Source: Ranitomeya imitator (taxonomy: Eukaryota). From it: a stretch of 64,000 bases of DNA. The stretch is taken from positions 1,129,516,001 to 1,129,580,000 of the forward strand of contig NC_091282.1 in assembly GCF_032444005.1 (NCBI RefSeq). Direction: 5' to 3'. The notes beneath the pieces are model-generated. The model worked only from the letters and a program-made list of their open reading frames with translations. It ran no database searches and had not been told where the DNA came from. Positions 334 through 62,920 of the stretch are shown here, in pieces; within the stretch, counting starts at the first letter, position 1; every line of letters begins with the position of its first letter. The translations under genes were made by a program, and so were the position numbers.

Positions 334-1220
334 TCCATCCTGCGTCCCCATCCTGTCATGTGCTGCTCCATCCTGCGTCCCCATCCTGTCATGTGCTGCT
401 CCCATCCTGCGCCCCGTTCTGTCATGTGCTGCTCCCATCCTGCGCCCCCGTTCTGTCATGTGCTGCTCCATCCTGCGCCCCCATTCTGTCATGTGCTGCT
501 CCATCCTGCATCCCCATCCTGTCATGTGCTGCTCCCATCCTGCGCCCCGTTCTGTCATGTGCTGCTCCCATCCTGCGCCCCCGTTCTGTCATGTGCTGCT
601 CCATCCTGCGCCCCCATTCTGTCATGTGCTGCTCCATCCTGCATCCCCATCCTGTCATGTGCTGCTCCCATCCTGCGCCCCGTTCTGTCATGTGCTGCTC
701 CCATCCTGCGCCCCCGTTCTGTCATGTGCTGCTCCCATCCTGCGCCTCCATTCTGTCATTTGCTGCTCCCATCCTGTCATGTGCTGCTCCCATCCTGTGC
801 CCCCGTTCTGTCATGTGCTGCTCTCATCCTGCGCCCCCATTCTGTCATGTGCTGCTCCCATCCTGCGCCCGTTCTGTCATGTGCTGCTGCCATCCTGCGC
901 CCGTTCTGTCATGTGCTGCTCCCATCCTGCGCCCGTTCTGTCATGTGCTGCTGCCATCCTGCGCCCGTTCTGTCATGTGCTGCTGCCATCCTGCGCCCGT
1001 TCTGTCATGTGCTGCTGCCATCCTGCGCCCGTTCTGTCATGTGCTGCTGCCATCCTGCGCCCGTTCTGTCATGTGCTGCTGCCATCCTGGGCCCGTTCTG
1101 TCATGTGCTGCTGCCATCCTGCGCCCGTTCTGTCATGTGCTGCTGCCATCCTGCGCCCGTACTGTCATGTGCTGCTGCCATCCTGCTCCCGTTCTGTCAT
1201 GTGCTGCTCCCATCCTGCGC
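334..1220. repeat. Minisatellite, ~32-bp unit (CCATCCTGCGCCCGTTCTGTCATGTGCTGCTG), roughly 27 copies
   Basis: Directly visible tandem array; units vary 31-34 bp and are more homogeneous toward the right end. Confidence 0.95.
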
Positions 1221-1334
1221 TACCATTGTATTATATGCCCCCCATAAGACGCTCCAGTGTGTATGCCCCCGTATGCTGCTGCCATATAAAAAAAAAAATA
1301 CCATACTCACCTATCGTCCGGCTCCACTGCAGGT

Positions 1335-9889: not shown

Positions 9890-10279
9890 TAATGGAATCC
9901 TTGCTTGAAAGCTGAGGCTTTGGCAGCTGAAAAAGGTCCAGGGTGGCTCCAGCAGCAGTTAAGGATGCTGAGCGACAGGGTCGGCGAGGTGGATGAGTTA
10001 CCGACACCTCCCAAGCGACCTAGTAGATCCCAGGCTCCTGTGCGGCTGAGCTCGGAGATGACCCTGAGAGTGCAACTGAAGGAGAGGAGCCCCACCAAGG
10101 ATCCCACAGAATCAGTAGCGCAAGCTGCTCGGCTGATCTCTCGTCTGGGAGGAATCTGCATCGGAGTGCTGACCCTTCTATGACTGCGTGCATGCACCAG
10201 GATATGCAGACATCACCGCATGATGGCATACTGATGCCACCGTGCAGTGGCGTGGTGACATCATCGCACACCATTGTGC
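9890..10279 (+). pseudogene. Ngaro gag-like ORF, N-terminal part (interrupted by CR1)
   Basis: Lies between repeat A1 and the CR1 insertion; ORF-track peptide KAEALAAEKGPGWLQQQL. Assignment rests mainly on position. Confidence 0.45.
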
Positions 10280-11684
10280 GTAACATAGTAACATAGTAAC
10301 ATAGTAACATAGTTAGTAAGGCCGAAAAAAGACATTTGTCCATCCAGTTCAGCCTATATTCCATCATAATAAATACCCAGATCTACGTCCTTCTACAGAA
10401 CCTAATAATTGTATGATACAATATTGTTCTGCTCCAGGAAGACATCCAGGCCTCTCTTGAACCCCTCGACTGAGTTCGCCATCACCACCTCCTCAGGCAA
10501 GCAATTCCAGATTCTCACTGCCCTAACAGTAAAGAATCCTCTTCTATGTTGGTGGAAAAACCTTCTCTCCTCCAGACGCAAAGAATGCCCCCTTGTGCCC
10601 GTCACCTTCCTTGGTATAAACAGATCCTCAGCGAGATATTTGTATTGTCCCCTTATATACTTATACATGGTTATTAGATCGCCCCTCAGTCGTCTTTTTT
10701 CTAGACTAAATAATCCTAATTTCGCTAATCTATCTGGGTATTGTAGTTCTCCCATCCCCTTTATTAATTTTGTTGCCCTCCTTTGTACTCTCTCTAGTTC
10801 CATTATATCCTTCCTGAGCACCGGTGCCCAAAAGTGGACACAGTACTCCATGTGCGGTCTAACTAGGGATTTGTACAGAGGCAGTATAATGCTCTCATCA
10901 TGTGTATCCAGACCTCTTTTAATGCACCCCATGATCCTGTTTGCCTTGGCAGCTGCTGCCTGGCACTGGCTGCTCCAGGTAAGTTTATCATTAACTAGGA
11001 TCCCCAAGTCCTTCTCCCTGTCAGATTTACCCAGTGGTTTCCCGTTCAGTGTGTAATGGTGATATTGATTCCCTCTTCCCATGTGTATAACCTTACATTT
11101 ATCATTGTTAAACCTCATCTGCCACCTTTCAGCCCAAGTTTCCAACTTATCCAGATCCATCTGTAGCAGAATACTATCTTCTCTTGTATTAACTGCTTTA
11201 CATAGTTTTGTATCATCTGCAAATATCGATATTTTACTGTGTAAACCTTCTACCAGATCATTAATGAATATGTTGAAGAGAACAGGTCCCAATACTGACC
11301 CCTGCGGTACCCCACTGGTCACAGCGACCCAGTTAGAGACTATACCATTTATAACCACCCTCTGCTTTCTATCACTAAGCCAGTTACTAACCCATTTACA
11401 CACATTTTCCCCCAGACCAAGCATTCTCATTTTGTGTACCAACCTCTTGTGCGGCACGGTATCAAACGCTTTGGAAAAATCGAGATATACCACGTCCAAT
11501 GACTCACCGTGGTCCAGCCTATAGCTTACCTCTTCATAAAAACTGATTAGATTGGTTTGACAGGAGCGATTTCTCATAAACCCATGCTGATATGGAGTTA
11601 AACAGTTATTCTCATTGAGATAATCCAGAATAACATCCCTCAGAAACCCTTCAAATATTTTACCAACAATAGAGGTTAGACTTA
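10280..11684 (-). mobile_element. CR1 LINE copy A, 3' part (left arm of palindrome)
   Basis: RT ORF on the minus strand, 3' UTR and (TATGTTAC)4 tail at 10280-10311. Continues in frame with 13116-13386. Confidence 0.95.
10402..11577 (-). CDS. CR1 ORF2 reverse transcriptase, C-terminal 391 aa of a 5'-truncated copy
   Basis: CR1 motifs [43 protein letters not shown]; no internal stops. The start Met is internal because the element is truncated and interrupted. Confidence 0.9.
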   Translation of the reverse strand: MRNRSCQTNLISFYEEVSYRLDHGESLDVVYLDFSKAFDTVPHKRLVHKMRMLGLGENVCKWVSNWLSDRKQRVVINGIVSNWVAVTSGVPQGSVLGPVLFNIFINDLVEGLHSKISIFADDTKLCKAVNTREDSILLQMDLDKLETWAERWQMRFNNDKCKVIHMGRGNQYHHYTLNGKPLGKSDREKDLGILVNDKLTWSSQCQAAAAKANRIMGCIKRGLDTHDESIILPLYKSLVRPHMEYCVHFWAPVLRKDIMELERVQRRATKLIKGMGELQYPDRLAKLGLFSLEKRRLRGDLITMYKYIRGQYKYLAEDLFIPRKVTGTRGHSLRLEERRFFHQHRRGFFTVRAVRIWNCLPEEVVMANSVEGFKRGLDVFLEQNNIVSYNY

Positions 11685-13115
11685 GGCTCTAAAAGTGAAC
11701 CTGGAAATTATAGGCCAGTAAGTCTAACCTCTATTGTTGGTAAAATATTTGAAGGGTTTCTGAGGGATGTTATTCTGGATTATCTCAATGAGAATAACTG
11801 TTTAACTCCATATCAGCATGGGTTTATGAGAAATCGCTCCTGTCAAACCAATCTAATCAGTTTTTATGAAGAGGTAAGCTATAGACTGGACCACGGTGAG
11901 TCATTGGACGTGGTATATCTCGATTTTTCCAAAGCGTTTGATACCGTGCCGCATAAGAGGTTGGTACACAAAATGAGAATGCTTGGTCTGGGGGAAAATG
12001 TGTGTAAATGGGTTAGTAACTGGCTTAGTGATAGAAAGCAGAGGGTGGTTATAAATGGTATAGTCTCTAACTGGGTCGCTGTGACCAGTGGGGTACCGCA
12101 GGGGTCAGTATTTGGACCTGTTCTCTTCAACATATTCATTAATGATCTGGTAGAAGGTTTACACAGTAAAATATCGATATTTGCAGATGATACAAAACTA
12201 TGTAAAGCAGTTAATACAAGAGAAGATAGTATTCTGCTACAGATGGATCTGGATAAGTTGGAAACTTGGGCTGAAAGGTGGCAGATGAGGTTTAACAATG
12301 ATAAATGTAAGGTTATACACATGGGAAGAGGGAATCAATATCACCATTACACACTGAACGGGAAACCACTGGGTAAATCTGACAGGGAGAAGGACTTGGG
12401 GATCCTAGTTAATGATAAACTTACCTGGAGCAGCCAGTGCCAGGCAGCAGCTGCCAAGGCAAACAGGATCATGGGGTGCATTAAAAGAGGTCTGGATACA
12501 CATGATGAGAGTATTATACTGCCTCTGTACAAATCCCTAGTTAGACCGCACATGAAGTACTGTGTCCACTTTTGGGCACCGGTGCTCAGGAAGGATATAA
12601 TGGAACTAGAGAGAGTACAAAGGAGGGCAACAAAATTAATAAAGGGGATGGGAGAACTACAATACCCAGATAGATTAGCGAAATTAGGATTATTTAGTCT
12701 AGAAAAAAGACGACTGAGGGGCGATCTAATAACCATGTATAAGTATATAAGGGGACAATACAAATATCTCGCTGAGGATCTGTTTATACCAAGGAAGGTG
12801 ACGGGCACAAGGGGGCATTCTTTGCGTCTGGAGGAGAGAAGGTTTTTCCACCAACATAGAAGCGGATTCTTTACTGTTAGGGCAGTGAGAATCTGGAATT
12901 GCTTGCCTGAGGAGGTGGTGATGGCGAACTCAGTCGAGGGGTTCAAGAGAGGCCTGGATGTCTTCCTGGAGCATAACAATATTGTATCATACAATTATTA
13001 GGTTCTGTAGAAGGACGTAGATCTGGGTATTTATTATGATGGAATATAGGCTGAACTGGATGGACAAATGTCTTTTTTCGGCCTTACTAACTATGTTACT
13101 ATGTTACTATGTTAC
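11685..13115 (+). mobile_element. CR1 LINE copy B, 5'-truncated, inserted antisense into copy A
   Basis: Begins GGCTCTAAAAGTGAACCTGG (GSKSEPGNYRPV) and ends in a (TATGTTAC)3 tail at 13092-13115. TTA flanks both sides (11682-11684, 13116-13118). Confidence 0.95.
11826..13001 (+). CDS. CR1 ORF2 reverse transcriptase, C-terminal 391 aa of copy B
   Basis: Same motifs as 10402-11577; 4 amino-acid differences (L/F, E/K, R/S, Q/H). Confidence 0.9.
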   Translation: MRNRSCQTNLISFYEEVSYRLDHGESLDVVYLDFSKAFDTVPHKRLVHKMRMLGLGENVCKWVSNWLSDRKQRVVINGIVSNWVAVTSGVPQGSVFGPVLFNIFINDLVEGLHSKISIFADDTKLCKAVNTREDSILLQMDLDKLETWAERWQMRFNNDKCKVIHMGRGNQYHHYTLNGKPLGKSDREKDLGILVNDKLTWSSQCQAAAAKANRIMGCIKRGLDTHDESIILPLYKSLVRPHMKYCVHFWAPVLRKDIMELERVQRRATKLIKGMGELQYPDRLAKLGLFSLEKRRLRGDLITMYKYIRGQYKYLAEDLFIPRKVTGTRGHSLRLEERRFFHQHRSGFFTVRAVRIWNCLPEEVVMANSVEGFKRGLDVFLEHNNIVSYNY

Positions 13116-13386
13116 TTACTGGCCTATAATTTCCAGGTTCACTTTTAGAGCCCTTTTTGAATATTGGCACCACATTTGCTATGCGCCAGTCCTGCGGAAC
13201 AGACCCTGTCGCTATAGAGTCACTAAAAATAAGAAATAATGGTTTATCTATTACATTACTTAGTTCTCTTAGTACTCGTGGGTGTATGCCATCCGGACCC
13301 GGAGATTTATCTATTTTAATCTTATTTAGCCGGTTTCGCACCTCTTCTTGGGTTAGATTGGTGACCCTTAATATAGGGTTTTCACC
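13116..13386 (-). mobile_element. CR1 LINE copy A, 5' part
   Basis: Minus-strand peptide RNRLNKIKIDKSPGPDGIHPRVLRELS..DWRIANVVPIFKKGSKSEPGNYRPV, which precedes the RT core of the left arm. 5' truncation point approximate. Confidence 0.9.
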
Positions 13387-13977
13387 ATGTCACCATGTAT
13401 GTCACCATGTGCAGAAGTGCCAGCAGCTGAAAGGGCATCCAAGTCTAAGGATGCTCCGGAATGGGTAGTCAGGGTTCTCGACCACTCATATGGTCTGGGG
13501 AGTTTGGCTGGCCCCAGAGAGGAAGAGGATTACAGATTGCTTGAACTTGGATGGGGTGGCAAGCAAAAGGAGAAGAGGTCTAGAAAGGACATTTCCAAGA
13601 GGCATATACCACACAAAAAGGGACATGGAAGGGGTACATGGCTGTCATTGGATTGCTGGATGCAGGCGTGCAGTTGAAGTGCCGACCCCTGCTGCTGGAT
13701 GTCATTCAGCAAGACCTGGGGACCACAGTGACAATACAACAGGACCTAAGGGACCACTGGTTGTGGGTGAGCCATCAGACAGCTCGGATGAAGAGGATGG
13801 ACTGCTGTTATCGGATGAAGAGAAAGAGACGGACACACGGGGGACATGCGCAACAGCTGTTCCAAGTTGCCCTCGTAGTCAGCCTGGTAAGAAACATGGT
13901 CACTGTACGTTAGTATGCAAGGAGAGTGTGGTTGGTGCAAGGCAGGCAGCAGATGACAATGAGGTGTCACAATTGTT

Positions 13978-23140: not shown

Positions 23141-24041
23141 CACTTTAATTAAAAATTCCTATTATTCCCTCCATCCTCTCTTTAACTGCTTTATTCATTT
23201 TTACTTCCTGTTTGATGATGATTTGTTTGGGAATCTCAGGGCATACTGGGATATACTCAGTGTCATCAGGGGGCAGAGACCAGAGTCACTGCCGCAGTCT
23301 CTGCCTATGCCTGGAAACGAAGTATCATCAGTGATGTATGTTTCTGGGGCTTGGCTAGTCTCTGCTCTACTGAACATGTATTAGAGGTCAATTCCCACTT
23401 ATACTCAGTAGGATCTTGCCACTGTGTAACATGCACAATGACAGTTCACTTGCTCTCCGGCTATGATGAGAAGTGACACGCCCGTAAGAGAGCACACTGT
23501 CAGAGTGCATTGTAAGTAGAAAACCAGGCAAGCAGAAAAAGCAGAGACCAGACCCACTTCCGCAAGTGACATCACTTGCAGCGTTGGTCTTTGCTATTCC
23601 TACACGCTGGATAATCTCCTTACAATGCGCACTGACAGTGCCCTCTCTTGCCAGCTTGTTACTTCTGATCAGAATTACTATTTTTACTGCGCATACATCA
23701 GAATTGACACCTGACATTTGCTCAGTACAGCAAGGACTAGCCCAGTCCCTGAAACAGAATTTAGTGTTGAAACAGTGATGTAAAACTGACCAAATACTGA
23801 TTAATCTAGTATCCAAAACATTGATGTCACTCGTGCCATTTTTTGAGCATGTGAAAAAACACAGATGTCTAAATGATGCTTTAGGAATGATGAGAAGTGT
23901 AAGAAGCTGAACCAAATGGGTCTGGTTCTGTTTTAGAAATTGTCTGTTAAACTCACTGACGAAACTGACATTCACATGACTGATCCATCAAAAAGGAGAC
24001 TTTTTCCTGCCATTAGTATTGGTGGGAGGATTGGTGGTCAG

Positions 24042-24712
24042 TAGTGTTGAGCGATACCTTTCGATATTTGAAAGTATCGGTATCGGATGGTATCGGCCGA
24101 TATCCAAAAAATATCGGATATCGCCGATACCGATACCCTATACCAATGCAAGTCAATGGGGCACAAATATCGGAATGTATCCTGGATGGTTCCCAGGGTC
24201 TGAAGGAGCGGAAACTCTCCTTCAGGCCCTGGGATTCATATTAATGTAAAAAATAAAGAATAAAAATAAAAAATATGGATATACTCACCCCTCCGAAGGA
24301 CCCTGGCTGTCACCGCTGCAAGCGTCTGCCTACATTCATAAGAATGCAGAGAGTGAAGGACCTTCGATGACGTGACCGCGACGTCATCGAAGGTCCTTCA
24401 CTCTCTGCATTCTTATGAACGGAGGCAGACGCTTGCAGCGGTGACAGCCAGGGTTCGTCGGAGGGGTGAGTATATCCATATTTTTTATTTTTATTCTTTA
24501 TTTTTAATATGAATATGGATCCCAGGGCCTGAAGGAGAGTTTGCTCTCCTCCAGACCCTGGGAACCACACGCACCGCACGCGCCGAAGATGACTAGGAAC
24601 TTCCGATTCCGATTTCCGATATCACAAAAATATCGGAACTCGGTATCGGAATTCCGATACAGCAAATATCGGCCGATACCCGATACTTGCAGTATTGGAA
24701 TGCTCAACACTA
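24042..24712. mobile_element. hAT-type MITE with an internal ~330-bp palindrome
   Basis: TIR TAGTGTTGAGC / GCTCAACACTA; exact 8-bp TSD GTGGTCAG (24034-24041, 24713-24720). Same family as 55813-56587. Confidence 0.9.
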
Positions 24713-25083
24713 GTGGTCAGAGCAATTTACAGAAAGGAGTGGCATATGCTGATAAGTCATGTACATGTACATGGAACAACCTCTGGCTCACCAAGCAGGA
24801 CTTAGGGCTACCTCGCCAGGTGGGAGATGTAAACCACATTTGCAATGCAAATTAATCAACCCCTATTGCAAATTAGGCTCATTAAATAATTTTAGAATAT
24901 TTCTGCTGTTTGCAATGAACCAATCAAATGCAAACAATTTATATGTAGCTCAAAACAACTAAACTAACAAGTAGTTTCTCCAAAACCAATACAAAAGCTG
25001 GACATTGAGGAGGAAGATGAGATGAGTGATTTGCTGCATGATGGGACTGGGGAGCGATGTACTGTAGATTGGGAATGTGTATA

Positions 25084-33056: not shown

Positions 33057-33169
33057 TTATTCCCTCACTGTCCAGGAGAGATAGGGCAACAAAGCGCAGA
33101 AATAAATATGGGTTTTTTGAAGGATAACTTCTCAGGATTCCAGAAGCTAAACACAAACACATCCTCTTA

Positions 33170-34184
33170 GGCCAGTTTCACACGTCAGTGGCTCCGCTAC
33201 GTGAGGTGACAGTTTCCTCACGTACCGGAGCCACTGACACACGTAGACACATTCAAATCAATGCATCTGTGCAGATGTCATTGATTTTTTGCAGTCCGTG
33301 TCTCCGTGTGCCAAACACGGAGACATGTCAGTGTTCGTGGGAGCGCACGGATTACACAGACCCATTAAAGTCAATGGGTCCGTGTAAAACATGTACCGCA
33401 CATGGACGTTGTCCGTGTGCAGTCCGTGTGCCATGCAGGAGACAGCTCTACAGTAAGCGCTGTCCCCCCACGTGGTGCTGAAGCCGCAATTCATATCTTC
33501 TCTGCAGCAGCGTTTGCTGTAAAGAAGATATGATAAATCCTTTTTTTTTTTGCTTCTCGTGTTTAACATAAAGATCCATGTCCCCACCCCCCTCCCACCC
33601 CCTGTGCGCCCGCCCGCTGTTATTAAAATACTCACCCGGCTCCCTCGCTGGCTGGCGCTGCTTCCTGTCCTGGCCGCACCTTCTACTGTATGAGCGGTCA
33701 CGTGGGGCCGCTCATTTACAGTAATGAATATGCGGCTCCACCCCTATGGGAGGTGGAGTCGCATATTCATGACTGTAATCGGCAGCCCCACGTGACCGCT
33801 CATACAGTAGAAGGTGCGGCCAGGACAGGAAGCAGCGCCAGCCAGCAAGGGAGCCGGGTGAGTATTTTAATAACAGCGGGCGGGCACACAGGGGGTGGGT
33901 ACATGGATCTTTATGTTAAACACGAGAAACAAAAAAAAAAAGGATTTATCACATCTTCTTTACAGCAAACACTGCTGCAGAGAAGATATGAATCGCGGCT
34001 TCAGCACCAGATGCAGGGGACAGCGCTAAACTTTAGCGCTGTCTCCTGCACGGTGCGTGTGGTACCCAGTGGGCACATGGGCAGCACACGTGTGCCGCAC
34101 GTGTGCCACACTGATGTGCCACAGAAACACACGGGCACACGGATAATTCCGGTACCGGAATTATCTGGACGTGTGGGACTGCCC
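33170..34184. mobile_element. Harbinger/PIF-type MITE with a ~600-bp internal palindrome
   Basis: TIR GGCCAGTTTCACAC / GTGTGGGACTGCCC; TTA TSD (33167-33169, 34185-34187); arms centred near 33746. Same family as 36271-37265. Confidence 0.85.
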
Positions 34185-34823
34185 TTAGCACAGGAGCATT
34201 CCCACACCCCCAGTTTCAGGTCTATTAGAATCCTTCTTCATGGCAGCTGGGCGCTGCAATTTCAATGTTGAGATTTATATTATTAGAAAGCCTTAGACAT
34301 GTATGTATCACTGACCATATGTATTGAATCAGGCACATCACGGGTGCTTATAATGTAGCTTATTTGCTGCCTGAGACAAAAAGTAAAATAGTTCCCCAAC
34401 TTTAGCTTTTGTATATGGGAAAGATGAACAAATGTGCTGGATATGAGTAGGCAGGGCCGTATTTAGAGTTTCTGCTGTCCTAGGCACTTTTAGGCTAGTT
34501 TCACATTTGCGTTAGAATCCGCAGTGTTTAATCCGCATCCGCAAGTACAGGAGAAAATGCATATAAACACGTACAAATGCGGCATTTTTTTAGACGCATG
34601 CGGGAACGCATGCGGTAAAAAAACACCGCGTTTGCATGCTTCTCAATGCGCTTTTTCCTGCGTTTGTGTTTTTGGTGCGCATGGTGACAAATTTTACTGG
34701 AGAAAAATCTAGATAACCAGACACTGCCAATGTGACTACAGAGGGCGTGTATTATGGGATATCTTTATATAGACCCTTGAACAGCTGAAATCTTCAGATT
34801 TTGCTCCTGTTTCCTGTGTCATA

Positions 34824-36171
34824 ATGGATCTTCGCATGGAGAGCTTTTACTTCAACCTGGAATTAAGCATCAAGCTGTTTCTTACCTGTGCGTTTGCTTG
34901 GGAGCAAGACAGAAATCAAGAAAGACGGAGAAGGAGACGTTGTAGGCGTTTTTGGAGACACCTCATTATTGAACTACGTGAGAGCCGTGTAGCATATCAC
35001 ACGCTGTATGGCGAGCTTAATGCCAACTCGAACAAATTTCCGGAATATACAAGGATGTTGCAAGACTCGTTCCGGGATTTGCTTGCTCGTGTCCAAGGAG
35101 CCATACGAAGACAGGACACCCAGCTCCGTAGAGCGATTCCACCAGAAGAATGTCTGCTGATTATATTAAGGTACGTAACAAATCTAAACCAATGGCAGTG
35201 CAAATTTTGGGTGTTCTGACATGTATTTTTGGGGTATTTACCTTTATGTCTTTAGCATAACCACACCATAAATAGAATTGATTGTAATTTTTTTTTTTTT
35301 CCTCCAGATTTCTGGCAACCGGAGAGAGTTTATCATCCCTCCACTTCCAATACCGGCTTGGAATATCCACCCTGTCCGGCATAGTTGCGGACACCTGCTG
35401 GGCTTTGTGGAATGTACTCCGGGATGAGTTTATACCCATACCCACCGCAGACATGTGGATTGGAATTGCGGAAAAATTCTGGAGTGTGTGTGATTTCCCC
35501 AACTGTTTGGGAGCAGTTGATGGAAAGCACATCCGCATTATCAAACCAGCCAGAACAGGATCGGAGTACTTCAATTGTAAAAAATATTTTTCTGTTGTGC
35601 TCATGGCAATAGCCGACGCGGACTGTCGCTTCATCTGCCGTGGCAACAATTCCCAGACTTTTAAGAACTCTGATATGGGCCGCCGTGTGTATGGCAAAAA
35701 TTTTAACTTTCCTCGGCCACGACTGCTCCCCAACACTCAAGGTCCACCAATGCCATTTGTTGTGGTTGGTGATGAGGCCTTTCATATGTATGAAAACCTA
35801 CTTGAGCCATATTCCAGTCGGGACTTGAACCACACTAAAAGGATCTTTAACTACAGACTGACCAGGGCTCGAAGAACAGTAGAGTGTACCTTTGGGATTC
35901 TAGTATCAAAATGCTGCATTCTTGCATCAGCCATTAATCTAAAAATGGAGACAGTCGACGAGGTGGTCAAAGCCTGTGTGGTTCTGCACAATTACATAAT
36001 GGCTAAGGAGCGGCCCAACATTGAACTGGATGAACCAGTTGCACACCCACTGCCCGATTACCAGCATCACCCGCTGCGGTCAACAGCTGAAGTTGGCCAC
36101 ATGCGGGAACAATTTGCTGCCTTTTTTATTCGGATATTGGACGTGTGTCATGGCAGGACAATGTTGTGTAA
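34824..36171 (+). pseudogene. Harbinger (HARBI1-like DDE) transposase, two exons (34824-35170, 35308-36171), damaged
   Basis: GT..AG intron 35171-35307 (GTACGT donor, poly-T+CCTCCAG acceptor) joins ..LLIILR to FLATGESLSSL. Catalytic motifs GAVDGKHI, VVVGDEAF, RRTVECTFGIL. Short in-frame deletion after DCRFI; apparent frameshift just before the stop at 36169-36171. Confidence 0.85.
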
Positions 36172-36270
36172 ATGTCCTGTTGTTATTTTATCTGTACCAG
36201 TTATTTTCTTACATGTTACTAATGTTTCTCGTTAATAAACTTTATTTTTTGGTGTCTTGACCGTGTCTCA

Positions 36271-37265
36271 GGCCGGTTTCACACGTCAGTGGCTCCGCTA
36301 CGTGAGGTGACAGTTTCCTCACGTACCGGAGACACTGACTCACGTAGACACATTAAAATCAATTTGTCCCTGCACATGTCAGCGTGTTTTCACGGACCGT
36401 GTGTCCGTTGTAAAAACACGGAGACATGTCAGTGTTCGTGGGAGCGCACGTATTACACGGACCCATTAAAGTCAATGGGTCTGTGTAAAACACGTACCGC
36501 ACACGGATGCTGTCTGTGTGCAGTCCGTGTGCCGTGCAGGAGACAGCGCTACTGTAAACGCTGTTCCCCCCGCGTGTGGTGCTGAAGCCCCATTCATTTA
36601 TTCTCTCCAGCAGCGTTTGCTGGAAAGAAGGAATGAATAATCTTTTTTTTTAATTTATTTTTGTTTTTAAAATAAAGTTGTCGGTAATCTACTTACCCAG
36701 CTCCCTCGGCGCTTACATCCTCTCAACGCCGCTGCTTGTCCTGTATGAGCGGTCACGTGGTGCCGCACATTACAGTGATGAATATGCGGCTCCACCTCCC
36801 ATAGGGGTGGAGCCGCATATTCATTACTGTAATAAGCGGCACCATGTGACCGCTCATACAAGACAAGCAGCGACGCTGAGAGGATGTAAGCGCCGAGGGT
36901 GCTGGGTAAGAATTTTAATGCCAGCGGGGGGGCGCACAGGGGGTGGGAGGGGGCAGATTACCGGCAACTTTATTTTAAAAACAAAAATAAATAAAAAAAA
37001 AATATTATTCATTCCTTCTTTCCAGCGAACGCTGCAGGGAAGAAGGGATGAATACTGGCTCCAGCACCGCATGCAGGGGACAGCGCTTAACTCTAGCGCT
37101 GTCTCCTGCACGGTCCATGTGGTCCTCAGTCGGCACACGGGTGGCACACAGCTGCGGCACGTGTGCCACACTGATGTTCAACGTAAGCACACGGACACAC
37201 GGACATGGATAATTCCGGTACCGATTTTTCCGGTACCGGAATTATCTGGACGTGTGAGACTGGCC
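36271..37265. mobile_element. Harbinger-type palindromic MITE (family of 33170-34184)
   Basis: Starts GGCCGGTTTCACACGTCAGTGGCTCCGCTACG, as the 33170 copy does apart from one base; flanks TCA / TTA. Confidence 0.8.
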
Positions 37266-37665
37266 TTAGGATTCTCCCTTGCCAGTGGACGGTCATGTCA
37301 GCACAAGCATGAGATTTGTATACTTCTGACCACATTCCGACTAGACGTGCCCGGCCTCGCTCAGTTCATTTTCAATGAGTGAGGCCACACATGTCTAGTC
37401 AGCACGTGACCGCATGTATGTAAATCGCCAGCACAAGAGAATCCTGACAGCGTGCAGTGCACACTGTGAGAACTCAGAAGTCTGCAGTCACAAAGAATGA
37501 CAGCAGACTCATTACAAAGCTGGACATTCCCTTTAATGCTCCTAACATAAATAAAACCATGAGAGTTAGTCAGTATCACAAATAACATTACATCCAGGTA
37601 CCTTATAGATGACGTCGTCTCTGCAGCTATTCTTCTTTTCTTCATCTTGTCCAGACCACCCCTTA

Positions 37666-38690
37666 TGCACTTAATCTTCGGTGTCTTTTGCTCCACTGGA
37701 GCACTTATCACCAGTGTTGGCCTCTGCAGCGCAAGTGAGCGACATCAGTAGCATGATCTTATCACGCTGCTCACGTCACTCTGACCCGGCAGTCAGAGCC
37801 TCAGTTGGACTCACTTCTGAAAGATGCGACTACAATTGATCCCTGGGCAGGGTCAGACACTGACAGCTTGGGGCCCCTGTGCAAGAACAGTGTCTGGGCC
37901 CCCTCCTTTTATGGCGACAAAGCTATATATATATATAGCCACACGCACATACATGTGTATATATTACATACCGTATATACTCGAGTTTAAGCCGACCCGA
38001 GTATAAGCCGAGGCACCTAATTTTGCCATGGAAAAGTGGGTAAGCTTATTGACTCAAATATAAGCCGGATATGCATTGTCCTCTCATTCCTATCCCAGAA
38101 TGTGTGGTTCCCCCATCTTGTCCTGCTCTATGTGGCTCCCCCTGTTGTATGCATGGCTCGGCTCCCCCTCCCATCTTGTATGCATGGCTCTGTTCCCCCC
38201 CAGTCCCATCCTGTATGAATGGCTCTGCTCCCCCCTGTCCCATCTTGTATGCATGGCTCTGCTCCCCCCTGTCCCATCTTGTATGCATGGCTCTGCTCCC
38301 CCCTGTCCCATCTTGTATGCATGGCTCTGTTCCCCCAGTCCCATCTTGTATGCATGGCTCTGTTCCCCCAGTCCCATCTTGCATGCATGGCTCTGTTTCC
38401 CCACAGTCCCATCCTGTATGCATGGCTCTGTTCCCCCCCAATCCCATCTTGTATGCATGGCTCTGTTCCCCCCAGTCCCATCTTGTATGCATGGCTCTGT
38501 TCTCTCCTGTCCCATCTTGTATGCATGGCTCTGTTCCCCCCAAGTCCCATCTTGTATGCATGGCTCTGTCCCCCCCAGTCCCATCCTGTATGCATGGCTC
38601 TGTCCCTCCCTGTCCCATCTTGTATTCATGGCTGATGGCTCTGTTCCTCCCCAAGTCCCATCTTGTATGCATGGCTCCCCATCCATCCCC
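37666..38690 (+). repeat. Copy 1 of an internal direct duplication (copy 2 starts at 40098)
   Basis: Both copies start TGCACTTAATCTTCGGTG (offset 2432 bp) and include a (TA)n, the left end of a pogo/Tc2-like MITE (TA|CCGTATATACTCGAG at 37971 and 40421) and a minisatellite. Confidence 0.9.
38128..38690. repeat. Minisatellite, ~33-bp unit (GTATGCATGGCTCTGTTCCCCCCAGTCCCATCTT)
   Basis: Visible tandem array; the same unit occurs at 40590-41160 and 41957-41993. Confidence 0.95.
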
Positions 38691-39339
38691 CCTCTTCCCC
38701 CTTCGTCCTCCTCCATTCTCCTCTGTTCTCTCTCATACTCACCTTTCTCAGTCACACCGCGCCGAAAGTCCCTCCACCTGTGTCCCGGCACTGCAGCTTC
38801 TTCCTGAGTGAGCGATCATGTGGTACCGCTCATTAAGGTCATGAATATGCATCCATATTCATGACCTTAATGAGCGGTACCATGTAACCGCTCAGCACAG
38901 GAAGAATCTGCCAGCGCTGAGACTCCTCACACTGTCCTCTCACACTGTGTCCCCCCTATAGGGCCCAGTATTTATGCTGTACTCTGTCATCACACTCCCC
39001 CTCCTAGGTATACTGTCCCCTCCTGGCTTTGTCCTTACACTGTCCCCCCATGCTACACCCCCACTACTCAGTTTCTATTCTGTGCCAACTCACTTTTCTC
39101 CCCCATACTGTCTCCTCACACTATTCCCCTCCTTCCTCATACTGTGTCCTCTCACATCCCTCCTGTTCACTTTACTGTCTCCTCCTCATATATTTCCCCC
39201 TCACTTTCTATACTGCCTGCTCACCTGACTCTCCATACTGTGTCTGCACACATCCCATCACCCTCTCTCACCGTACTCTGTACGCATACACTTTTCACAT
39301 CACTACTCATACTGGGTTCACATACATTCGCCTTTCGCT

Positions 39340-39870
39340 CCCCACACTGTCTGCACCCATCCCCCATACTGTTTCCTCAGACATGCCCCCCATTCCCCAG
39401 TACTGTTTCCTCATACATCCCCCCATTCTCCCATATTGTTTTCTTGTATATGCCCCCCATACTGTTTCCTCATACATGCCCCCATTCCCCCATACTGTTT
39501 CCTCATACATGCCCCCATTCCTCCATACTGTTTTCTCGTACATGCCCCCATTCCTCCATACTTTTTCTTGTACATGCCCCCATTCCCCTGTACCGTTTCC
39601 TCATACATGTCCTCCATTCCCCAGTACTGTTTCCTCATATATGCCCTCCATTCCCCAATACTGTTTCCTCATACATGCCCCCCGTTGCCCAGTACTGTTT
39701 CCTCATACATGCCCCTCATTCTTCCATACTGTTTTCTCGTACATTCCCCCATTCCACTGTACTGTTTCCTCATACATGCCCTCCATTCCCGCATATTGTT
39801 TCCTCACACATACCCTCCATTCCCCAGCACTGTTTCCTCATACATGCCCCCCATTCCCAAGTACTGTTTC
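39340..39870. repeat. Degenerate minisatellite, ~31-bp unit (CATACATGCCCCCATTCCCCATACTGTTTCCT)
   Basis: Visible tandem units; ends approximate. Confidence 0.85.
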
Positions 39871-40097
39871 CCCACCTCCCCTTTGCTCTTCATTTTGTGT
39901 CCTCAAATCTCCTCCACACATTAAATCCCCCCATCATCACTACAAATCTCCCCACACACAATAACCCCACCCCCACTCAAATTCTCCACACACATAATAA
40001 ATCTCCCCCATCCCCACACGATAAATCTTCCCATCCCCACTCAAATTCTCCACACATAATAAATCTCCCCATCCCCACTCCAATTCTTCCCCCCCCG

Positions 40098-40354
40098 TGC
40101 ACTTAATCTTCGGTGTCTTTTGCTCCACTGGAGCACTTATCACCAGTGTTGGCCTCTGCAGCGCAAGTGAGTGACATCAGTAGTATGATCTGATCACGCT
40201 GCTCATGTCACTCTGACCCGGCAGTCAGAGCCTCAATAGGACTCACTTCTGAAAGATGCGAGTACAATTGATCCCTGGGCAGGGTCAGACACTGACAGCT
40301 TGGGGCCCCTGTGCAAGAACTGTGTCTGGGCCCCCTCCTTTTATGGCAACAAAG

Positions 40355-40386
<32 letters not shown>

Positions 40387-41993
40387 CCACACACACACAT
40401 ACATGTGTATATATTACATACCGTATATACTCGAGTATAAGCCGACCCAAGTATAAGCCGAGGCACCTAATTTTGCCACGGAAAACTGGGTAAGCTTATT
40501 GACTCAAGTATAAGCCGGATATGCATTGTCCTCTCATTCCTATCCCAGTATGTGTGGTTCCCCCCATCCTGTCCTGCTCTATGTGGCTCCCCCTGTTGAA
40601 TGCATGGCTCGGCTCCCCCATCCCATCTTCTATGCATGGCTCTGTTCCCCCAGTCCCATCCTGTATGCATGGCTCTGCTCCCCCCCTGTCCCATCTTGTA
40701 TGCATGGCTCTGTTCCCCCCAGTCCCATCTTGTATGCATGGCTCTGTTCCCCCCAGTCCCATCTTGTTGTATGCATGGCTCTGTTCCCCCAGTCCCATCT
40801 TGTATGCATGGCTCTGTTCCCCCCCAGTCCCATCTTGTATGCATGGCTCTGTTCCCCCCCAGTCCCATCTTGTATGCATGGCTCTGTTCCCCCTAAGGCC
40901 CATATTCTATGCATGGCTCTCTTCCCCCCAGTCCCATCTTGTAAGCATGGCTCTGTTCCCCCAGTCCCATCTTGTATGCATGGCTCTGTTCCCCCCAGTC
41001 CCATCTTGTATGCATGGCTCAGTTCCCCCCCAGTCCCATCTTGCATGTATGGCTGTGTTCCCCCCAGTCCCATCTTGTATGCATGGCTCTGTTCCCCCCA
41101 ATCCCTTCTTGTATGCATGGCTCTGTTCCCCCCAAGTCCCATCTTGTATGCATGGCTCTGTGTTGTGAATTCTGTTGTCAAGCTCCCTCTTGTGGTCGTG
41201 AATGGTACTTCGGCGAGTTCCGTCTATGGGCTCCCTCTGGTGGCTATGAGTGAAGCTGCGGCTTCTGAGGTTCCTTACACAGGTGACGTGGTTTATCCTT
41301 TGGTTGGCTGTTCTATTTAACTCCTTTCAGATCGTTACTCTAGGCCAGCTGTCAATGTTTTTGCATTCGTTCAGTTCGCTCCTGGATCTCTCTGGTGACC
41401 TGCCTTCTCCTGCAGAAGCTAAGTTCCTTATTGTCTTATTTTGTTCTCTGTTTTCTTGTCCAACTGGTTTTCATGATTTTGTCTTGCTAGCTGGAAGCTC
41501 TGGGATGTAGAGTGGCCCCTCCGCACCGTGAGTCGATGCGGAGGTCTTTTTTGCACACTCTGCGTGGTCTTTGTAGGTTTTTGTGCTGATCGCAAAGTTA
41601 CCTTTCCTATCCTCTGTCTATTTAGTTAGTCTGGCCTCCCTTTGCTGAAAACCTGTTTTCATTTCTGCATTTGTGACTTTCATCTTTACTCACAGTCAAT
41701 ATATGTGGGGGGCTTCCTTTACCTTTGGGGAATTTCTCTGAGGCAAGGTAGGCTTTATTTTCCTTCTCTAGGGCTAGATAGCCCTTAGGCTGTGACGAGG
41801 CGCCTAGGTCTGGTCAGGAGCGCTCCACGGCTATTTCTAGTGTGTGTGATAGGATTAGGGCTTGCGGTCAGCAGAGTTCCCACATCCCAGAGTTCGTCCT
41901 GTATGTGGTTTAACTATCAGGTCATTCCGGGTGCTCCTAACCACCAGGTCATAACAGCTCTGTTCCCCCCTGTCCCATCTTGTTTGCATGGCT
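40098..41993 (+). repeat. Copy 2 of the internal duplication, with a solo LTR in its minisatellite
   Basis: Aligns to 37666 onward; minisatellite 40590-41160 resumes at 41957. Confidence 0.9.
41161..41956. mobile_element. Solo LTR (Gypsy-like)
   Basis: TGTTGTGAATTC..GGTCATAACA termini; GCTCTG on both sides (TSD length 4-6 bp is ambiguous because the target is a repeat). Confidence 0.85.
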
Positions 41994-44059: not shown

Positions 44060-44336
44060 AATTAGAACAGCATCATATTACCAAACTTGTGGTGCAAAGC
44101 TTTCCAAACCAATATTCAAATGGTTCCAATAATATAAGAAAAAAAGGAAAACAGCACACAAAAAAAAAATAGAAAAAAGTGGGCTTTAATGCCTGGACGG
44201 CGTGGCAACGTTTCGGATTTCCAATCCTTTTTCAAGCAGCTGCTTGAAAAAGGATTGGAAATCCGAAACGTTGCCACGCCGTCCAGGCATTAAAGCCCAC
44301 TTTTTTCTATTTTTTTGTGTGCTGTTTTCCTTTTTT

Positions 44337-48924: not shown

Positions 48925-50576
48925 AAGGGTTGGCCAATAAAAACAAATTATTAAACAGTTACTATAATCTATCTGCATCTGCTGATTGGCGAGTGTCCCA
49001 CCTCTGGTACCCGCACCGATAAGTAGATGAGGGAACTTTAAGCCCCACTTAGAAATGAAGCAGCAGGTCCCCCGACTTGAGTTCCATTCATACCCTATGG
49101 GCAGGAGCGTGCAGTCCATAGCTGCAAACCTTGCTATGCCATGTGCCCCATAAGCTAGGGGGGCCAGTGCCGCTCAGCAACTGGGCCTTCCTTCCCATCC
49201 ATCATCAAAATTTCACCTGTGTCCACATCTACAGGAGGAGGGCGCCATTGAGTAGAATGATAGATCAGGGCGCCAAAGACTAAGTGATCCACCTTTCATT
49301 CAGAGCCTGTGAGTCTGAAAGTCCATGCACTCGAGGTGCAACAACATCACTCCATCTCAATTACAGTGCGGATTAGTGTTTTTGTTTTAAATGTCAGCAG
49401 CTATAGGGACCCTCACACTGAGTGGAGAGCTGTGGGGATTTCATATTGAGGGGAATTGAGAAGATCCTTACACTGAACTTGGGGTTGTGGAACCATCATA
49501 ATGAATGGGAGACTGTCACCACAGTGGGAGCTTATGGGGCTATCATACTGAGTGGGGGACTGTGGGAACATCATACTGAGTGGGGGACTGTGGGAACATC
49601 ATACTGAGTGGGGGACTGTAGGAACATCATACTGAGTGGGGGACTGTGGGAACATCATACTGAGTGGTGGCTGTGGGGTGAGTCATAATCAGAGGGGACT
49701 TTGGGGTGAATCATACTGAGTGAGGGTCTGTGGAGGGCATCATACTGAGCAGAGGACTACTGTAAGTGGGCAATCTCACTTAGTAAGGGACTGTGGGAGC
49801 ATCAGACCAAGGGGCAATCATACTGTGCAATGGCTGTGAGGGCCATAATACTGAGGGGTGGGCTGTGGGATATCATACTGAGGACTGGGGGAGTGATCAA
49901 ACTGAGGGCTGTGTGGGGATCATACTGAATGGGGGCCATCATATTGAATAGGGGATGTGGGAGCATCATACTGAGGGGCTGTGGGGGCATCATATTAAAG
50001 GGCCATCATACTGTATGGGGACTGTGGAGTGTCTGATATGGTTGTGGGGCATCATACTGACAAGCCATCACACTGTGTGGGGGCCATGATACTATGCGTG
50101 CTTTAGAGCCATCATGCTGTGGAGGTATTATATTGTGTTGGGGACACTGTGGGGACATCATACTTTGCTGGAGGCACAGTGGATTCATCATATTTATGTG
50201 TGAGTGGGCAGTGGAGTGAAATGGGGAGGAATTCACTGTCGGGATATCATACACTTTATGGGTGGGGGGCATTTTGGGAGCATCAAACTCAAGGAAGGAG
50301 ATATGACCCCATCTACTTTGCCAAATATTTGTTTTGGGGATGAGGGGGCGCCACTGCCTATGGGTCTGCCATTAAAAAAAAATAGAGCAGCACCCGATAG
50401 CCTTATGAGGATTGAATGGAGCAGTGCACTGCCGCTCCATTCTAATGTGGATAAAAGTTTCCCGTTCTGCCCATGTGGGTAGTTCACAGCAGTTGCCACC
50501 CCTACCCCTTCACTGATGAACAAGTTATAAGTTTTCCTGTGGGTAATTGATAACTTGTTTTCACTGAGCAACCCCT
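48925..50576. mobile_element. T2-type MITE split by a hAT insertion
   Basis: TTAA at 48921-48924 and 50577-50580; termini AAGGGTTG.. / ..CAACCCCT. Confidence 0.6.
49102..50356. mobile_element. hAT-type MITE carrying a 28-bp minisatellite (CATCATACTGAGTGGGGGACTGTGGGAA)
   Basis: Exact 8-bp TSD CCTATGGG (49094-49101, 50357-50364); weak CAG..CTG termini; array clearest at 49535-49670. Confidence 0.7.
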
Positions 50577-50627
50577 TTAAAGGAAATCTGTTGTCAGGTT
50601 TTTGCCACTTAATCTGAAAGTAGCATA

Positions 50628-52240: not shown

Positions 52241-53433
52241 TAATATGAGACAGAGAGCCTGATTCCAATGATGTGTCATTTAATTATTTGCTTGCTGTAG
52301 TTCTGATAAAAATCATTGTTTTATCAGTAGGAGATTATCACTAGAGGACTAGTAAACCTGCTGTCATGTTGTCATCCATATTCATGAACTCTGTCTAAGT
52401 CTGCCCCCACCACAATTTTCTGCCTATGCACAGTATACACAGAAAGCTGTCAATCAGTGGGGTGGGCAGAGTTCGGCCTTCAGAGAACTGCTATGTCTGC
52501 AGTAGTAAAAACACTGATTTTATCAAAACTGCAGCAAGCAGCACAGTGATACATCAGTGGAATCAAGATCTCTGCCCCTACATTATTCTGCACTCAGAAG
52601 TGGTAGCAAAAACTTAGTGATAAATTCCCTTTATGTTTACCAGGTGTGGGAATAAGTTATTGCAGTATTCAGCACAATTTGTTATGTGCTACCTAGACCC
52701 CTGGGTAATTGATCCTAGAAACAAAATGCTGACTTGATTGCACTGCTTGTAAAGCCTGAGTTCAGTAAGACTGCACTGATTAAGCTAATTTCAGTTCTTT
52801 ATGTGCATTGACTTGTAACCTTTTTGGTTTCATGTATCAGATGATTTAATGTCCTTTCTGTATAAGTAGATTCCAGACCCAGTTTACTGTGCTCTCATAA
52901 AATAAATGAGCGACCATAATACAAGCCCCTGTAGGATTTCAACACATAAAGGACAAGACTTCTACATAAATTTTATTATTTACTGTCAGCAGCAGAATGG
53001 GAGCTGCTCATGAAGACATGAAAGTCTTACAGTGTATTAGTTAAGATGCTACATATGAAAATTGTCTAAAAGCAAAACCAATAACAACCAATCACCGCAC
53101 AGTTTCCATTGTTCATAAAAGATGAAAGCTGCACTGAGATTGGTTGCTATGGGCAACAGTGACAATTTTGGTTTCAGATAGTTTTCTAAAATCTCCAATG
53201 TACCAATCATATGGATTTTTTCTCATTCATGGGACCCATACCTCCCAACTTGGAAGGCCAGGAAACAGGGACCGATAAGCCACATCCTTAAACCATGCAG
53301 TTTATTTTTGTGCGACCATACAAAAATAGTGCCGTTAATGAAGCCCCATAGTGTTTCATACTGTTCATTGTTCCTTTTATGGCCTCCACAAAGTTTAATG
53401 CCGTAGAGATGCTCCCACGTAGACTGATGGTAC

Positions 53434-62565: not shown

Positions 62566-62920
62566 AACCCAATTTGTATGCATGTAGAATATGATTGCCA
62601 TGACCACAGGGACTTTACCCTAACAGGGTCTTATAAGATATAAATGCTTCTGGAGACCAGGGGGCCATACCGTGATGGTCACTCCTCCACACCAGGGGGC
62701 CATACCAAAGATGGTTACATCTCCATTCCAGGGGGTCATACTATGATGTACACCCCTCCATCCAGGGGCCACACCCGAGATGTTTACTCCTCCACACAAG
62801 GGGTGATACTATGATGAACACCCCCCCCTAAACAGAGGGTCCATACCTGAGATGGTTACCCCTACTGACCAAATTATAATTAGCTTCAAGGACCCACTAA
62901 AAAAGAAACAAATAAGTGCT

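What the first reader, a model, noticed from the sequence alone, without database searches (positions are those of the whole stretch)
10280..13386. CR1 inserted antisense into its own twin at the homologous position, making a 2.8-kb palindrome with a 34-bp spacer
Seen: arms 10280-11684 and 11719-13115 are reverse complements (at least 7 substitutions spotted, 4 non-synonymous), each with an open 391-aa RT frame and a TATGTTAC tail. The spacer 11685-11718 is the 5' end of plus copy B. The same 34 nt reappear inverted at 13119-13152 as the continuation of minus copy A, whose 5' part runs to ~13386. B is flanked by TTA/TTA, and the target strand ends ..CAGTAA-3', complementary to the TTACT of the tail. 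So B's 5' truncation point lies only 34 nt from the position homologous to its own insertion site, which is very unlikely by chance. Inference: homology-guided retrotransposition, where CR1 RNA forms an R-loop on a resident copy, the displaced strand is nicked and primes reverse transcription on the tail, and cDNA synthesis stops just past the nick. The alternative is a fold-back or template-switch duplication of A followed by divergence. Either way, read-through would give ~1.4 kb of dsRNA (possible endo-siRNA/piRNA source), and the DNA could extrude a cruciform.
Basis: partly seen in the sequence, partly recalled or inferred. Interest (0 to 1): 0.8.

Follow-up and report, generated by a model that had tools for sequence, protein, structure and literature searches.

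The report
Mirror-image nested CR1 retrotransposon pair
In a poison-frog genome, a young CR1 jumping-gene copy carries a second, backwards copy of the same element inserted almost exactly at its own matching position, and this 2.8-kb DNA palindrome is absent as a whole from another chromosome copy of the species, so it comes from retrotransposition (probably two linked events), not from DNA duplication.

Summary
The arms 10287-11684 and 11719-13116 are 1398 nt long with 7 substitutions, no indels and a 34-nt spacer. Copy B (+, 11685-13115) has its own 8-mer tail and a 3-5-nt target duplication, and it splits minus-strand copy A (10280-11684 plus 13116-13384).

New evidence:
- Contigs of another sample of the same species join 10279 directly to 13397. 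The whole A+B block is therefore a presence/absence polymorphism.
- All 7 arm differences are B-private. A matches the family majority at each of them (0:7, p=0.016).
- Three of B's four amino-acid changes hit CR1-conserved residues, and none of the 7 is at a CpG.
- Both arms share one rare family variant (Q248H, about 0.2% of family depth).

Fold-back DNA duplication followed by divergence is rejected. B was reverse-transcribed from a different RNA of the same small subfamily.

B lands inside a still-polymorphic copy of its own rare subfamily, antisense, and is truncated 34 nt past the homologous point. Chance is an unlikely explanation for that combination. I favour a compound or closely coupled double retrotransposition.

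No served run holds the whole structure, so it has no read-level confirmation. The scan lists one other antisense CR1-in-CR1 case in this genome (s1-280677, unchecked).

The parts
10280..11684 (-). Copy A, 3' part: RT C-terminal half, 3' UTR and tail (left palindrome arm)
   Evidence: Identical to contigs of another organism except at 10375 and 10834 (records 23-25).
10280..10313 (-). Tail of A: 8-nt microsatellite, 4.2 units, abutting the left flank at 10279
   Evidence: empty-site contig breakpoint at 10279.
11680..11684 (.). Left copy of B's target-site duplication (TTA, or ACTTA if 2 nt of B's tail are counted)
   Evidence: record 25 shows the uninterrupted sequence.
11685..13115 (+). Copy B: 5'-truncated CR1 (1431 nt) with an open RT frame, a 3' UTR hairpin and a tail of 3.4 units; carries all 7 arm differences
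11685..11718 (+). Spacer: the first 34 nt of B, which lie upstream of the point homologous to the break in A; identical to the reverse complement of 13119-13152
   Evidence: pair I2, 100%.
13090..13115 (+). Tail of B
13114..13118 (.). Right copy of B's target-site duplication (overlaps the last 2 nt of B's tail)
13116..13384 (-). Copy A, 5' part (RT N-terminal region up to ..GNYRPV), 5'-truncated
   Evidence: translation. record 28 (0 differences), plus loose ends at 13384 that show the family sequence continuing.
13385..13396 (.). 12-nt filler at A's 5' junction, a near-tandem copy of the first 12 nt of the right flank
   Evidence: 12-nt period x2 at 13387-13410; empty allele has one copy.
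10279..13397 (.). Boundaries of the whole insertion: in the empty-site allele 10279 is joined directly to 13397 (3-nt GTA ambiguity)
   Evidence: records 1 (X1) and 8 (X2): a 523-nt contig with 0 differences over 130+154 nt of flank.

Best explanation
Two RNAs of one small, recently active CR1 subfamily were reverse-transcribed into one locus in opposite orientations.

Copy A was made by target-primed reverse transcription at 10279|13397. It is 5'-truncated, with a 3-nt GTA overlap with its tail and a 12-nt templated filler at its 5' junction.

Copy B was made from a different RNA, about 0.5% diverged and probably from a slightly decayed source copy mobilised in trans. B's cDNA was primed on the sense strand of A at ..CCAGTAA(GT)-3' with 2-3 nt of tail microhomology. 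It stopped 34 nt beyond the point homologous to the break. It was then joined without microhomology, leaving a 3-5-nt target duplication.

Shown: B is a separate retrotransposition product and not a DNA copy of A, and the A+B block is absent from an alternative allele.

Inferred: the two events were coupled. They were either one compound integration or a second round at the fresh integration site by the same or a neighbouring RNP. The complementarity between the incoming sense RNA and the antisense strand of A at the break influenced where B's cDNA ended, in the way a twin-priming junction ends at or just past the second annealing point.

My confidence in the core (nested TPRT from a second RNA) is about 0.85. 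For the coupling it is about 0.55-0.6.
For: - B has its own tail of different length (3.4 versus 4.2 units), a flanking duplication and a 5' truncation.
- The 7 arm differences are all B-private. Contigs of organism D lie on arm A over 10314-11679 with only 2 differences, both at sites where A equals B. No site on arm A shows >=10% other letters at the 7 positions in X1-X3. The split is 0:7, binomial p=0.016.
- B's L96F, E244K and R346S replace residues conserved in frog, turtle, bird and lizard CR1.
- No change is at a CpG, and 7 in 1432 nt is far above known RT error rates (established knowledge). B's template was therefore a different genomic source.
- A and B share H248 where CR1 in general has Q. 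About 99.8% of family depth has the other base (place 10834). The matching state amounts to about 260 (X1) and 250 (X2) unique-depth equivalents.
- A 523-nt contig in X1 and X2 joins 10279 to 13397 with no mismatch, so A itself is polymorphic and very young.
- By my rough arithmetic, random insertion of one of a few hundred young copies into another in a multi-Gb genome is expected about 0.03 times genome-wide. That is before requiring antisense orientation and a truncation within about 40 nt (about 2%).
- Template switching, twin priming with small junction duplications and synchronous double insertions are documented for L1. LINE RTs jump templates and use DNA or RNA templates.
Against: - This is one locus only.
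- No read-level confirmation exists: no served run holds more than 0.92 of the words, and the best holders show the empty allele.
- B looks like an ordinary endonuclease-made insertion into duplex DNA, with a short target duplication and direct 5' joining as described for LINEs. Nothing in the sequence itself demands a single event.
- An A-only allele was neither found nor excluded.
- No concrete step explains why the cDNA ended exactly 34 nt past the homologous point.
- Copy numbers come from contig depths, which the tool warns are not copy numbers.
- The genome's own CR1 target preference is unknown. A strong preference for a motif inside CR1 would raise the chance expectation.
Confidence: 0.6

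Rival explanations
1. Two unrelated, independent insertions. A inserted first. Later an ordinary CR1 insertion happened to land in A, antisense, and happened to be truncated 34 nt from the homologous position.
For: B has all the marks of a normal TPRT insertion. With about 1e5 family copies (rough), CR1-in-CR1 nesting must be common. A truncation within +-40 nt has roughly a 2% chance per antisense pair, so some such cases are expected genome-wide. The first-stage scan read many windows, which is a selection effect.
Against: The host is not a random family member. It is a still-polymorphic copy (empty allele) and carries the same rare H248 variant as the guest (about 0.2% of family depth). Young-in-young nesting is expected about 0.03 times per genome under random insertion (my estimate), before the orientation and truncation coincidences.
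Confidence: 0.15
2. One reading: homology-guided retrotransposition. A CR1 RNA forms an R-loop on a resident copy, the displaced sense strand is nicked and primes on the RNA tail, and cDNA synthesis stops where the RNA is still hybridised to the DNA, just past the nick.
For: It explains the antisense orientation (the displaced sense strand is the primer) and the stop 34 nt beyond the break. The incoming RNA and the host are 99.5% identical. The scan lists another antisense CR1-in-CR1 case in this genome (s1-280677; unchecked).
Against: It does not explain why, among about 1e5 resident copies, the host is of the guest's own rare subfamily and is still polymorphic. The tail/target pairing is out of register by 4 nt. 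I know of no precedent for R-loop-guided LINE targeting, and none turned up in the papers read.
Confidence: 0.12
3. The locus is a retro-copy (or DNA copy) of a pre-existing composite. B nested into A's source element elsewhere, and the composite transcript was then retrotransposed here as one unit.
For: It would explain why A+B is present or absent as a unit. The A part ends in a normal tail and a 5' truncation.
Against: It only moves the coincidence to the source locus. A 1.4-kb hairpin RNA is a poor RT template. There are no A-to-G changes of the kind editing of such a hairpin would leave. X1 and X2 miss about 8% of the stretch's words, which fits absence of the junctions, though this is not decisive.
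Confidence: 0.05
4. Assembly artefact: a chimeric or fold-back long read, or mis-joined CR1 copies, created the palindrome.
For: No served run holds the full structure. The best-matching sample shows only the empty site. Contigs of that sample contain many fold-back-like CR1 joints, so fold-back molecules exist at least in libraries (table 5).
Against: Fold-back read artefacts give spacer-less, identical arms that continue as the reverse complement of the upstream flank. Here the arms differ at 7 sites, have tails of different length, are flanked by a target duplication, and are followed by the exact continuation of A and then by unique flank that matches the empty allele.
Confidence: 0.05
5. 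DNA-level fold-back or inverted duplication of A, followed by divergence of the arms.
For: Near-identical arms with a short spacer; one shared rare variant at 10834/12569.
Against: The second arm ends exactly at a CR1 tail with a different unit number and has a target duplication. Differences are 0 on A versus 7 on B relative to the family majority (p=0.016). The 34-nt spacer is B's own upstream sequence and not a loop of A. The shared variant is carried by hundreds of copy-equivalents in a sample that has an empty allele at this locus.
Confidence: 0.03

Closest known systems
L1 twin priming and its switching variants (5'-inverted L1 insertions)
   Same: An inversion junction inside a LINE insertion. 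The tail-primed cDNA ends at or slightly beyond the place where the other target end can anneal to the RNA, giving small junction duplications. Here the other target end is perfectly complementary to the RNA at exactly the homologous position, and B overshoots it by 34 nt.
   Different: Twin priming uses one RNA and gives one tail, one target duplication and an inverted segment from the upstream part of the RNA. Here both arms cover the same 3' region, each has its own tail, they come from different RNAs (7 differences), and the second primer was not extended.
Synchronous or chimeric L1 insertions, L1 template switching and L1-associated foldbacks in tumour and cell models
   Same: Two reverse-transcribed sequences in inverted orientation at one break, explained by two RNAs or by cDNA-mediated tethering.
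   Different: Those events are somatic and involve L1, often with translocations or sister-chromatid foldbacks. Here the event is germline and involves CR1, with one element neatly nested in the other and no rearrangement of the flanks.
Head-to-head dimers of Penelope-like elements (frequent in this genome according to earlier scan notes)
   Same: A retroelement palindrome with a short spacer delivered at one site.
   Different: Penelope dimers are reported as letter-identical arms made from one template with a single flanking duplication. Here the arms differ at 7 sites, the guest has its own target duplication, and the host continues beyond it.
R2 integration: template jump and homology between the cDNA end and target DNA (4-way junction model)
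   Same: Homology between the cDNA/RNA and the target decides where the 5' junction forms; the RT can jump templates and copy DNA.
   Different: In R2 the homology is to upstream target sequence carried on the RNA and gives a seamless join. Here the orientation is antisense, so the cDNA is identical to the adjoining top strand rather than complementary to it, and the join shows no microhomology.
Ordinary nested LINE-in-LINE insertions and inverted LINE pairs that yield hairpin RNAs (own knowledge, not checked here)
   Same: Structure: a TPRT insertion inside an older copy, with the potential to form long dsRNA if transcribed through.
   Different: Host and guest are of the same rare subfamily, the host is still polymorphic, and the guest's 5' end coincides with the break point.

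Membership tests
CR1-clade LINE | Reverse transcriptase most similar to CR1-type RTs | tested here: met
   RVT_1 E=1.3e-33. Best relatives are CR1-type ORFs of birds and turtles (45-56%), Xenopus (65%) and Ranitomeya imitator (93% over 59%). The motif ..PHxEYCVQFW.. is shared.
CR1-clade LINE | 3' end with a hairpin followed by an 8-nt microsatellite (described) | tested here: met
   8-nt unit x4.2 and x3.4. A GGCUGAA..UUCGGCC stem lies directly upstream; the fold z-score of -1.05 is not significant on its own.
CR1-clade LINE | APE-type endonuclease domain and ORF1 upstream | not testable with these tools
   Both copies are 5'-truncated within the RT, and no full-length copy could be fetched.
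Nested target-primed reverse transcription insertion (B in A) | Guest ends in the element's own tail, is 5'-truncated and is flanked by a target duplication; the host is restored by removing guest plus one duplication copy | tested here: met
   An uninterrupted contig of another organism bridges 11679 to 13114 (record 25).
Twin priming (single-RNA 5' inversion) | One RNA; the inverted part comes from upstream of the forward part; a single tail | tested here: not met
   Two tails, the same region in both arms, 7 one-sided differences.
Snap-back or fold-back copy (Penelope-like dimer or DNA fold-back duplication) | The second arm is templated by the first, so arms are identical at birth and differences accrue symmetrically | tested here: not met
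   0:7 asymmetry against the family majority; different tail length; own target duplication.
Insertion polymorphism (young element) | An allele with the exact empty site exists in the species | tested here: met
   A 523-nt contig in X1 and X2 joins 10279 to 13397 with 0 mismatches. One sample only; it may be the other haplotype of the source individual.
Homology-guided (R-loop) retrotransposition | Recurrent antisense self-nests with the guest's 5' end just past the host's break point; an RNA:DNA hybrid intermediate | not testable with these tools
   It needs a genome-wide census or an experiment. Only one further candidate is listed by the scan (s1-280677), and its sequence could not be read here.

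The most novel reading that the evidence does not exclude
CR1 RNPs can be directed to, or re-initiate at, DNA of their own family. Either the incoming RNA pairs with a resident or freshly made copy (R-loop or cDNA hybrid), or the RT that has just finished one integration picks up a second CR1 RNA by its tail and primes on the new second strand. Either route would systematically produce antisense self-nested pairs whose inner 5' end tracks the break point. LINEs would then build long palindromes and hairpin-RNA loci against themselves.
Probability: 0.15. Interest if true: 0.8.

Novelty: new variant of a known kind. Interest (0 to 1): 0.5.

Why it matters
If the coupling is real, this locus is a germline, sequence-resolved by-product of CR1 integration. 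The second half of LINE integration is poorly understood, and almost nothing of it is known for CR1. The locus would show that a second RNA of the family can be reverse-transcribed at a fresh integration site, and that homology with the target shapes the 5' end.

It also creates a 2.8-kb near-perfect palindrome with a 34-nt spacer in a single step. Such a palindrome is a potential fragile site, and it would yield 1.4 kb of dsRNA against an active element if transcribed. Its young age, with the empty allele still segregating, makes it a natural test of how long such palindromes survive.

If the coupling is not real, the locus is a tidy but ordinary nested insertion.

Tried and rejected
- Other copies in the window: none, so no local outgroup was available.
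- Exact-protein look-ups of both 391-aa frames: nothing on record.
- Two protein searches: only distant CR1s plus one Ranitomeya protein at 93%. The second search added nothing.
- Metagenome scan: 80 loci, all 40-56% relatives from another vertebrate. None has a young short-spacer palindrome. This is a weak negative control only.
- Second run search on a 104-nt stretch dense in B-private sites: X1 and X2 hold 4 of 7 sampled words, and other organisms hold 1-4. This is not diagnostic. In a family of about 1e5 copies, any single-variant 31-mer recurs.
- The 15 best-supported contig joints in X1/X2 link antisense position i to sense position j. In 13 of them |i-j| is at most 43 nt, and 13 have 2-8 nt of microhomology (table 5). 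I considered using these as evidence that CR1 fold-backs are common. I rejected that because they have the signature of library snap-back chimeras at a very deep repeat, their depths do not scale with unique coverage, and none of the listed ones appears in X3.
- Six of B's 7 changes are at third codon positions (p about 0.007 by my arithmetic). I considered this as a sign of purifying selection and do not rely on it. Three of those six are non-synonymous, two of them (L96F, R346S) at conserved residues, and 6 of the 7 changes overall are simply GC-to-AT.
- Single-RNA models (twin priming, snap-back of either cDNA) were worked through and rejected on the 7 one-sided differences and the two tails.
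- Precise excision as the origin of the empty allele was rejected as far less likely than an ancestral empty site.
Full report
**1. The observation**

The window contains an inverted repeat with arms 10287-11684 and 11719-13116. The arms are 1398 nt long, 99% complementary and 34 nt apart. A second perfect 39-nt inverted pair lies at 11685-11723 / 13114-13152.

An ungapped comparison gives exactly 7 substitutions and no indel. Each arm has an open 391-aa frame with an RVT_1 domain (E=1.3e-33). No other copy of the family lies in the 64-kb window.

The element ends in an 8-nt microsatellite, with 4.2 units at 10280-10313 and 3.4 units at 13090-13116. A hairpin precedes the microsatellite. This is the 3' structure described for CR1.

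The nearest proteins are CR1-type RTs:
- birds and turtles, 45-56%
- Xenopus, 65%
- Ranitomeya imitator, 93% over 59% of the query

Earlier scan notes call the genome a poison frog.

**2. Anatomy**

On the minus strand, copy A reads from about 13384 down to 13116, ending ..GNYRPV. It resumes at 11684 and runs to its tail at 10280.

Between these two parts lies copy B on the plus strand (11685-13115), flanked by TTA on each side. B's tail ends in AC, so the duplication can also be read as ACTTA. A contig of another organism that carries the uninterrupted family sequence bridges 11679 to 13114 (record 25).

B's first 34 nt (the spacer) lie upstream of the point homologous to the break in A. They are identical to the corresponding stretch of A on the other side. 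The B/A 5' junction shows no microhomology.

At the 3' junction the primer strand ..CCAGTAAGT can pair 2-3 nt with the tail.

**3. New evidence: the empty site**

Contigs of two runs from one sample of the same organism label (X1, X2) were laid on 10150-13550. A single 523-nt contig covers 10150-10279 and continues directly at 13397-13550 without a mismatch. It is the only contig on the flanks.

The whole block 10280-13396 is therefore absent from at least one chromosome of the species. A, and hence B, is very young.

A's own junctions look like TPRT:
- the tail abuts the flank with a 3-nt GTA overlap
- CR1 homology stops at 13384
- 12 nt that nearly repeat the start of the right flank follow

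No served run holds more than 0.92 of the sampled words of the stretch. The structure therefore has no independent read-level confirmation. The sample may even be the source individual carrying the empty site on its other haplotype.

**4. New evidence: polarity of the differences**

Contigs of another organism (X8) lie on arm A across 10314-11679 with only two differences, at 10375 and 10834. A and B agree with each other at both sites. In X1-X3 no position of arm A among the seven shows 10% or more of another letter.

A therefore has the family-majority state at all seven sites, and all seven changes are B's. A 0:7 split has a two-sided binomial p of 0.016.

B's changes have these properties:
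- L96F, E244K and R346S replace residues conserved across frog, turtle, bird and lizard CR1.
- None of the seven is at a CpG, and six are GC-to-AT.
- Seven changes in 1432 nt is far above RT error rates (established knowledge).

B's template was therefore a different, slightly decayed genomic source and not A's RNA or A's DNA. This rejects fold-back duplication followed by divergence, and it rejects every single-RNA model (twin priming, snap-back).

**5. A shared rare variant**

At 10834/12569 both arms have the codon CAC (H248). CR1 RTs generally have Q there, and about 99.8% of the family depth has the other base.

The matching state amounts to 1340 depth units in X1 and 2238 in X2. Divided by the flank depths (5.08 and 8.83), this is about 260 and 250 copy-equivalents. 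This is a rough figure, because the tool warns that depth is not copy number.

The variant is thus a marker of a small subfamily and not a private mutation of this locus. A and B both belong to that subfamily.

**6. Chance or coupling**

Taken alone, a guest 5' end within about 40 nt of the host's break point has roughly a 2% chance per antisense nest. A family of about 1e5 copies must contain some such cases.

Here, however, the host is a still-polymorphic member of the guest's own subfamily of a few hundred copies. Under random insertion in a multi-Gb genome I estimate about 0.03 such young-in-young nests per genome. That is before requiring the orientation and the truncation.

I therefore favour coupling. 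The candidates are:
- one compound integration
- a second round at the fresh site by the same or a neighbouring RNP using another CR1 RNA
- homology between the incoming RNA and the new copy

The coupling is inference. B by itself looks like an ordinary endonuclease-made insertion with a short target duplication and direct 5' joining. Both features are known for LINEs; ZfL2-1 gives 5-bp duplications.

**7. Why 34 nt**

After the second-strand cut, the 3' end of A's antisense strand (..GACTTA-3') is perfectly complementary to the incoming sense RNA at exactly the homologous position. This is the geometry of twin priming. There the tail-primed cDNA ends at or a little beyond the second annealing point, giving small junction duplications.

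In this locus the second primer was not extended. The analogy is therefore suggestive and not a proof.

It does not explain the choice of host. The R2 work shows that homology between cDNA and target, template jumps and DNA-templated synthesis are within the repertoire of LINE RTs. L1 work documents two RNAs or cDNAs in inverted orientation at one break.

**8. Consequences**

The centre folds as a perfect hairpin (284 nt around the spacer: -151 kcal/mol, z = -36). Cruciform extrusion and, with read-through, 1.4 kb of dsRNA are structurally possible. Expression and small RNAs were not tested.

**9. Comparison and verdict**

The elements are CR1-clade LINEs by RT similarity and 3' structure. The endonuclease and ORF1 cannot be checked because both copies are truncated.

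The structure is a nested TPRT insertion. It is not twin priming, not a snap-back dimer like the Penelope palindromes that earlier notes report in this genome, and not a DNA fold-back.

It is best filed as a new variant of known LINE integration by-products. The scan lists one other antisense CR1-in-CR1 case in this genome (s1-280677, unchecked).

The decisive tests are population genotyping for an A-only allele, a genome-wide census of same-family nests, and long reads across the locus.

Noticed in passing
window 50626-52242: Tc1-type DNA transposon with perfect 202-nt terminal inverted repeats and an open 371-aa transposase (DDE_3 plus HTH_Tnp_Tc3_2). It looks young and possibly active.
   Followed up: partly
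window 55811-56600 and 24032-24714 (inverted relative to each other): Two copies of a non-coding element with AGTGTTGAGC-type terminal inverted repeats whose core is itself a palindrome. One copy has 216-nt arms, 100% complementary, with a 31-nt spacer (55923-56385). The other has 187-nt arms, 94%, with a 7-nt spacer (24187-24567). The palindrome is a property of the family.
   Followed up: partly
Read laying on window 10150-13550, runs X1/X2 (table 5): Hundreds of contig joints link antisense CR1 to sense CR1. Of the 15 shown, 13 join positions at most 43 nt apart. Microhomology is mostly 4-5 nt, and depth is 0.1-0.6% of the family depth. None of the listed ones is in X3. These are probably library snap-back chimeras at a very deep repeat, but real fold-back CR1 copies are not excluded.
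   Followed up: partly
runs X3-X20 and X21-X36: The same CR1 family is held almost word for word by runs labelled as at least five to ten different organisms. The consensus-like contigs of organism D differ from arm A at 2 of about 1370 positions. This suggests a very recent common origin of the family across species, very slow divergence, or horizontal spread.
   Followed up: no
window 35405-36232, with repeats between 33165-37203: PIF/Harbinger-type transposase frame (DDE_Tnp_4, E=2.5e-18) inside a region of direct and inverted repeats.
   Followed up: no
window 737-1312, 38159-41161, 49495-49718, 62080-62666: Tandem arrays with periods of 32, about 34, 28 and 48 nt. The 34-nt array occurs in two blocks 2.4 kb apart within a duplicated segment (37659-38114 / 40091-40564).
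   Followed up: no
window 44163-44316: Perfect 77-nt-arm palindrome with no spacer, next to TA-rich and GACA microsatellites.
   Followed up: no
window 13385-13410: A's 5' junction carries a 12-nt near-tandem copy of the adjoining flank instead of a flanking target duplication. This looks like a templated filler from end joining.
   Followed up: partly
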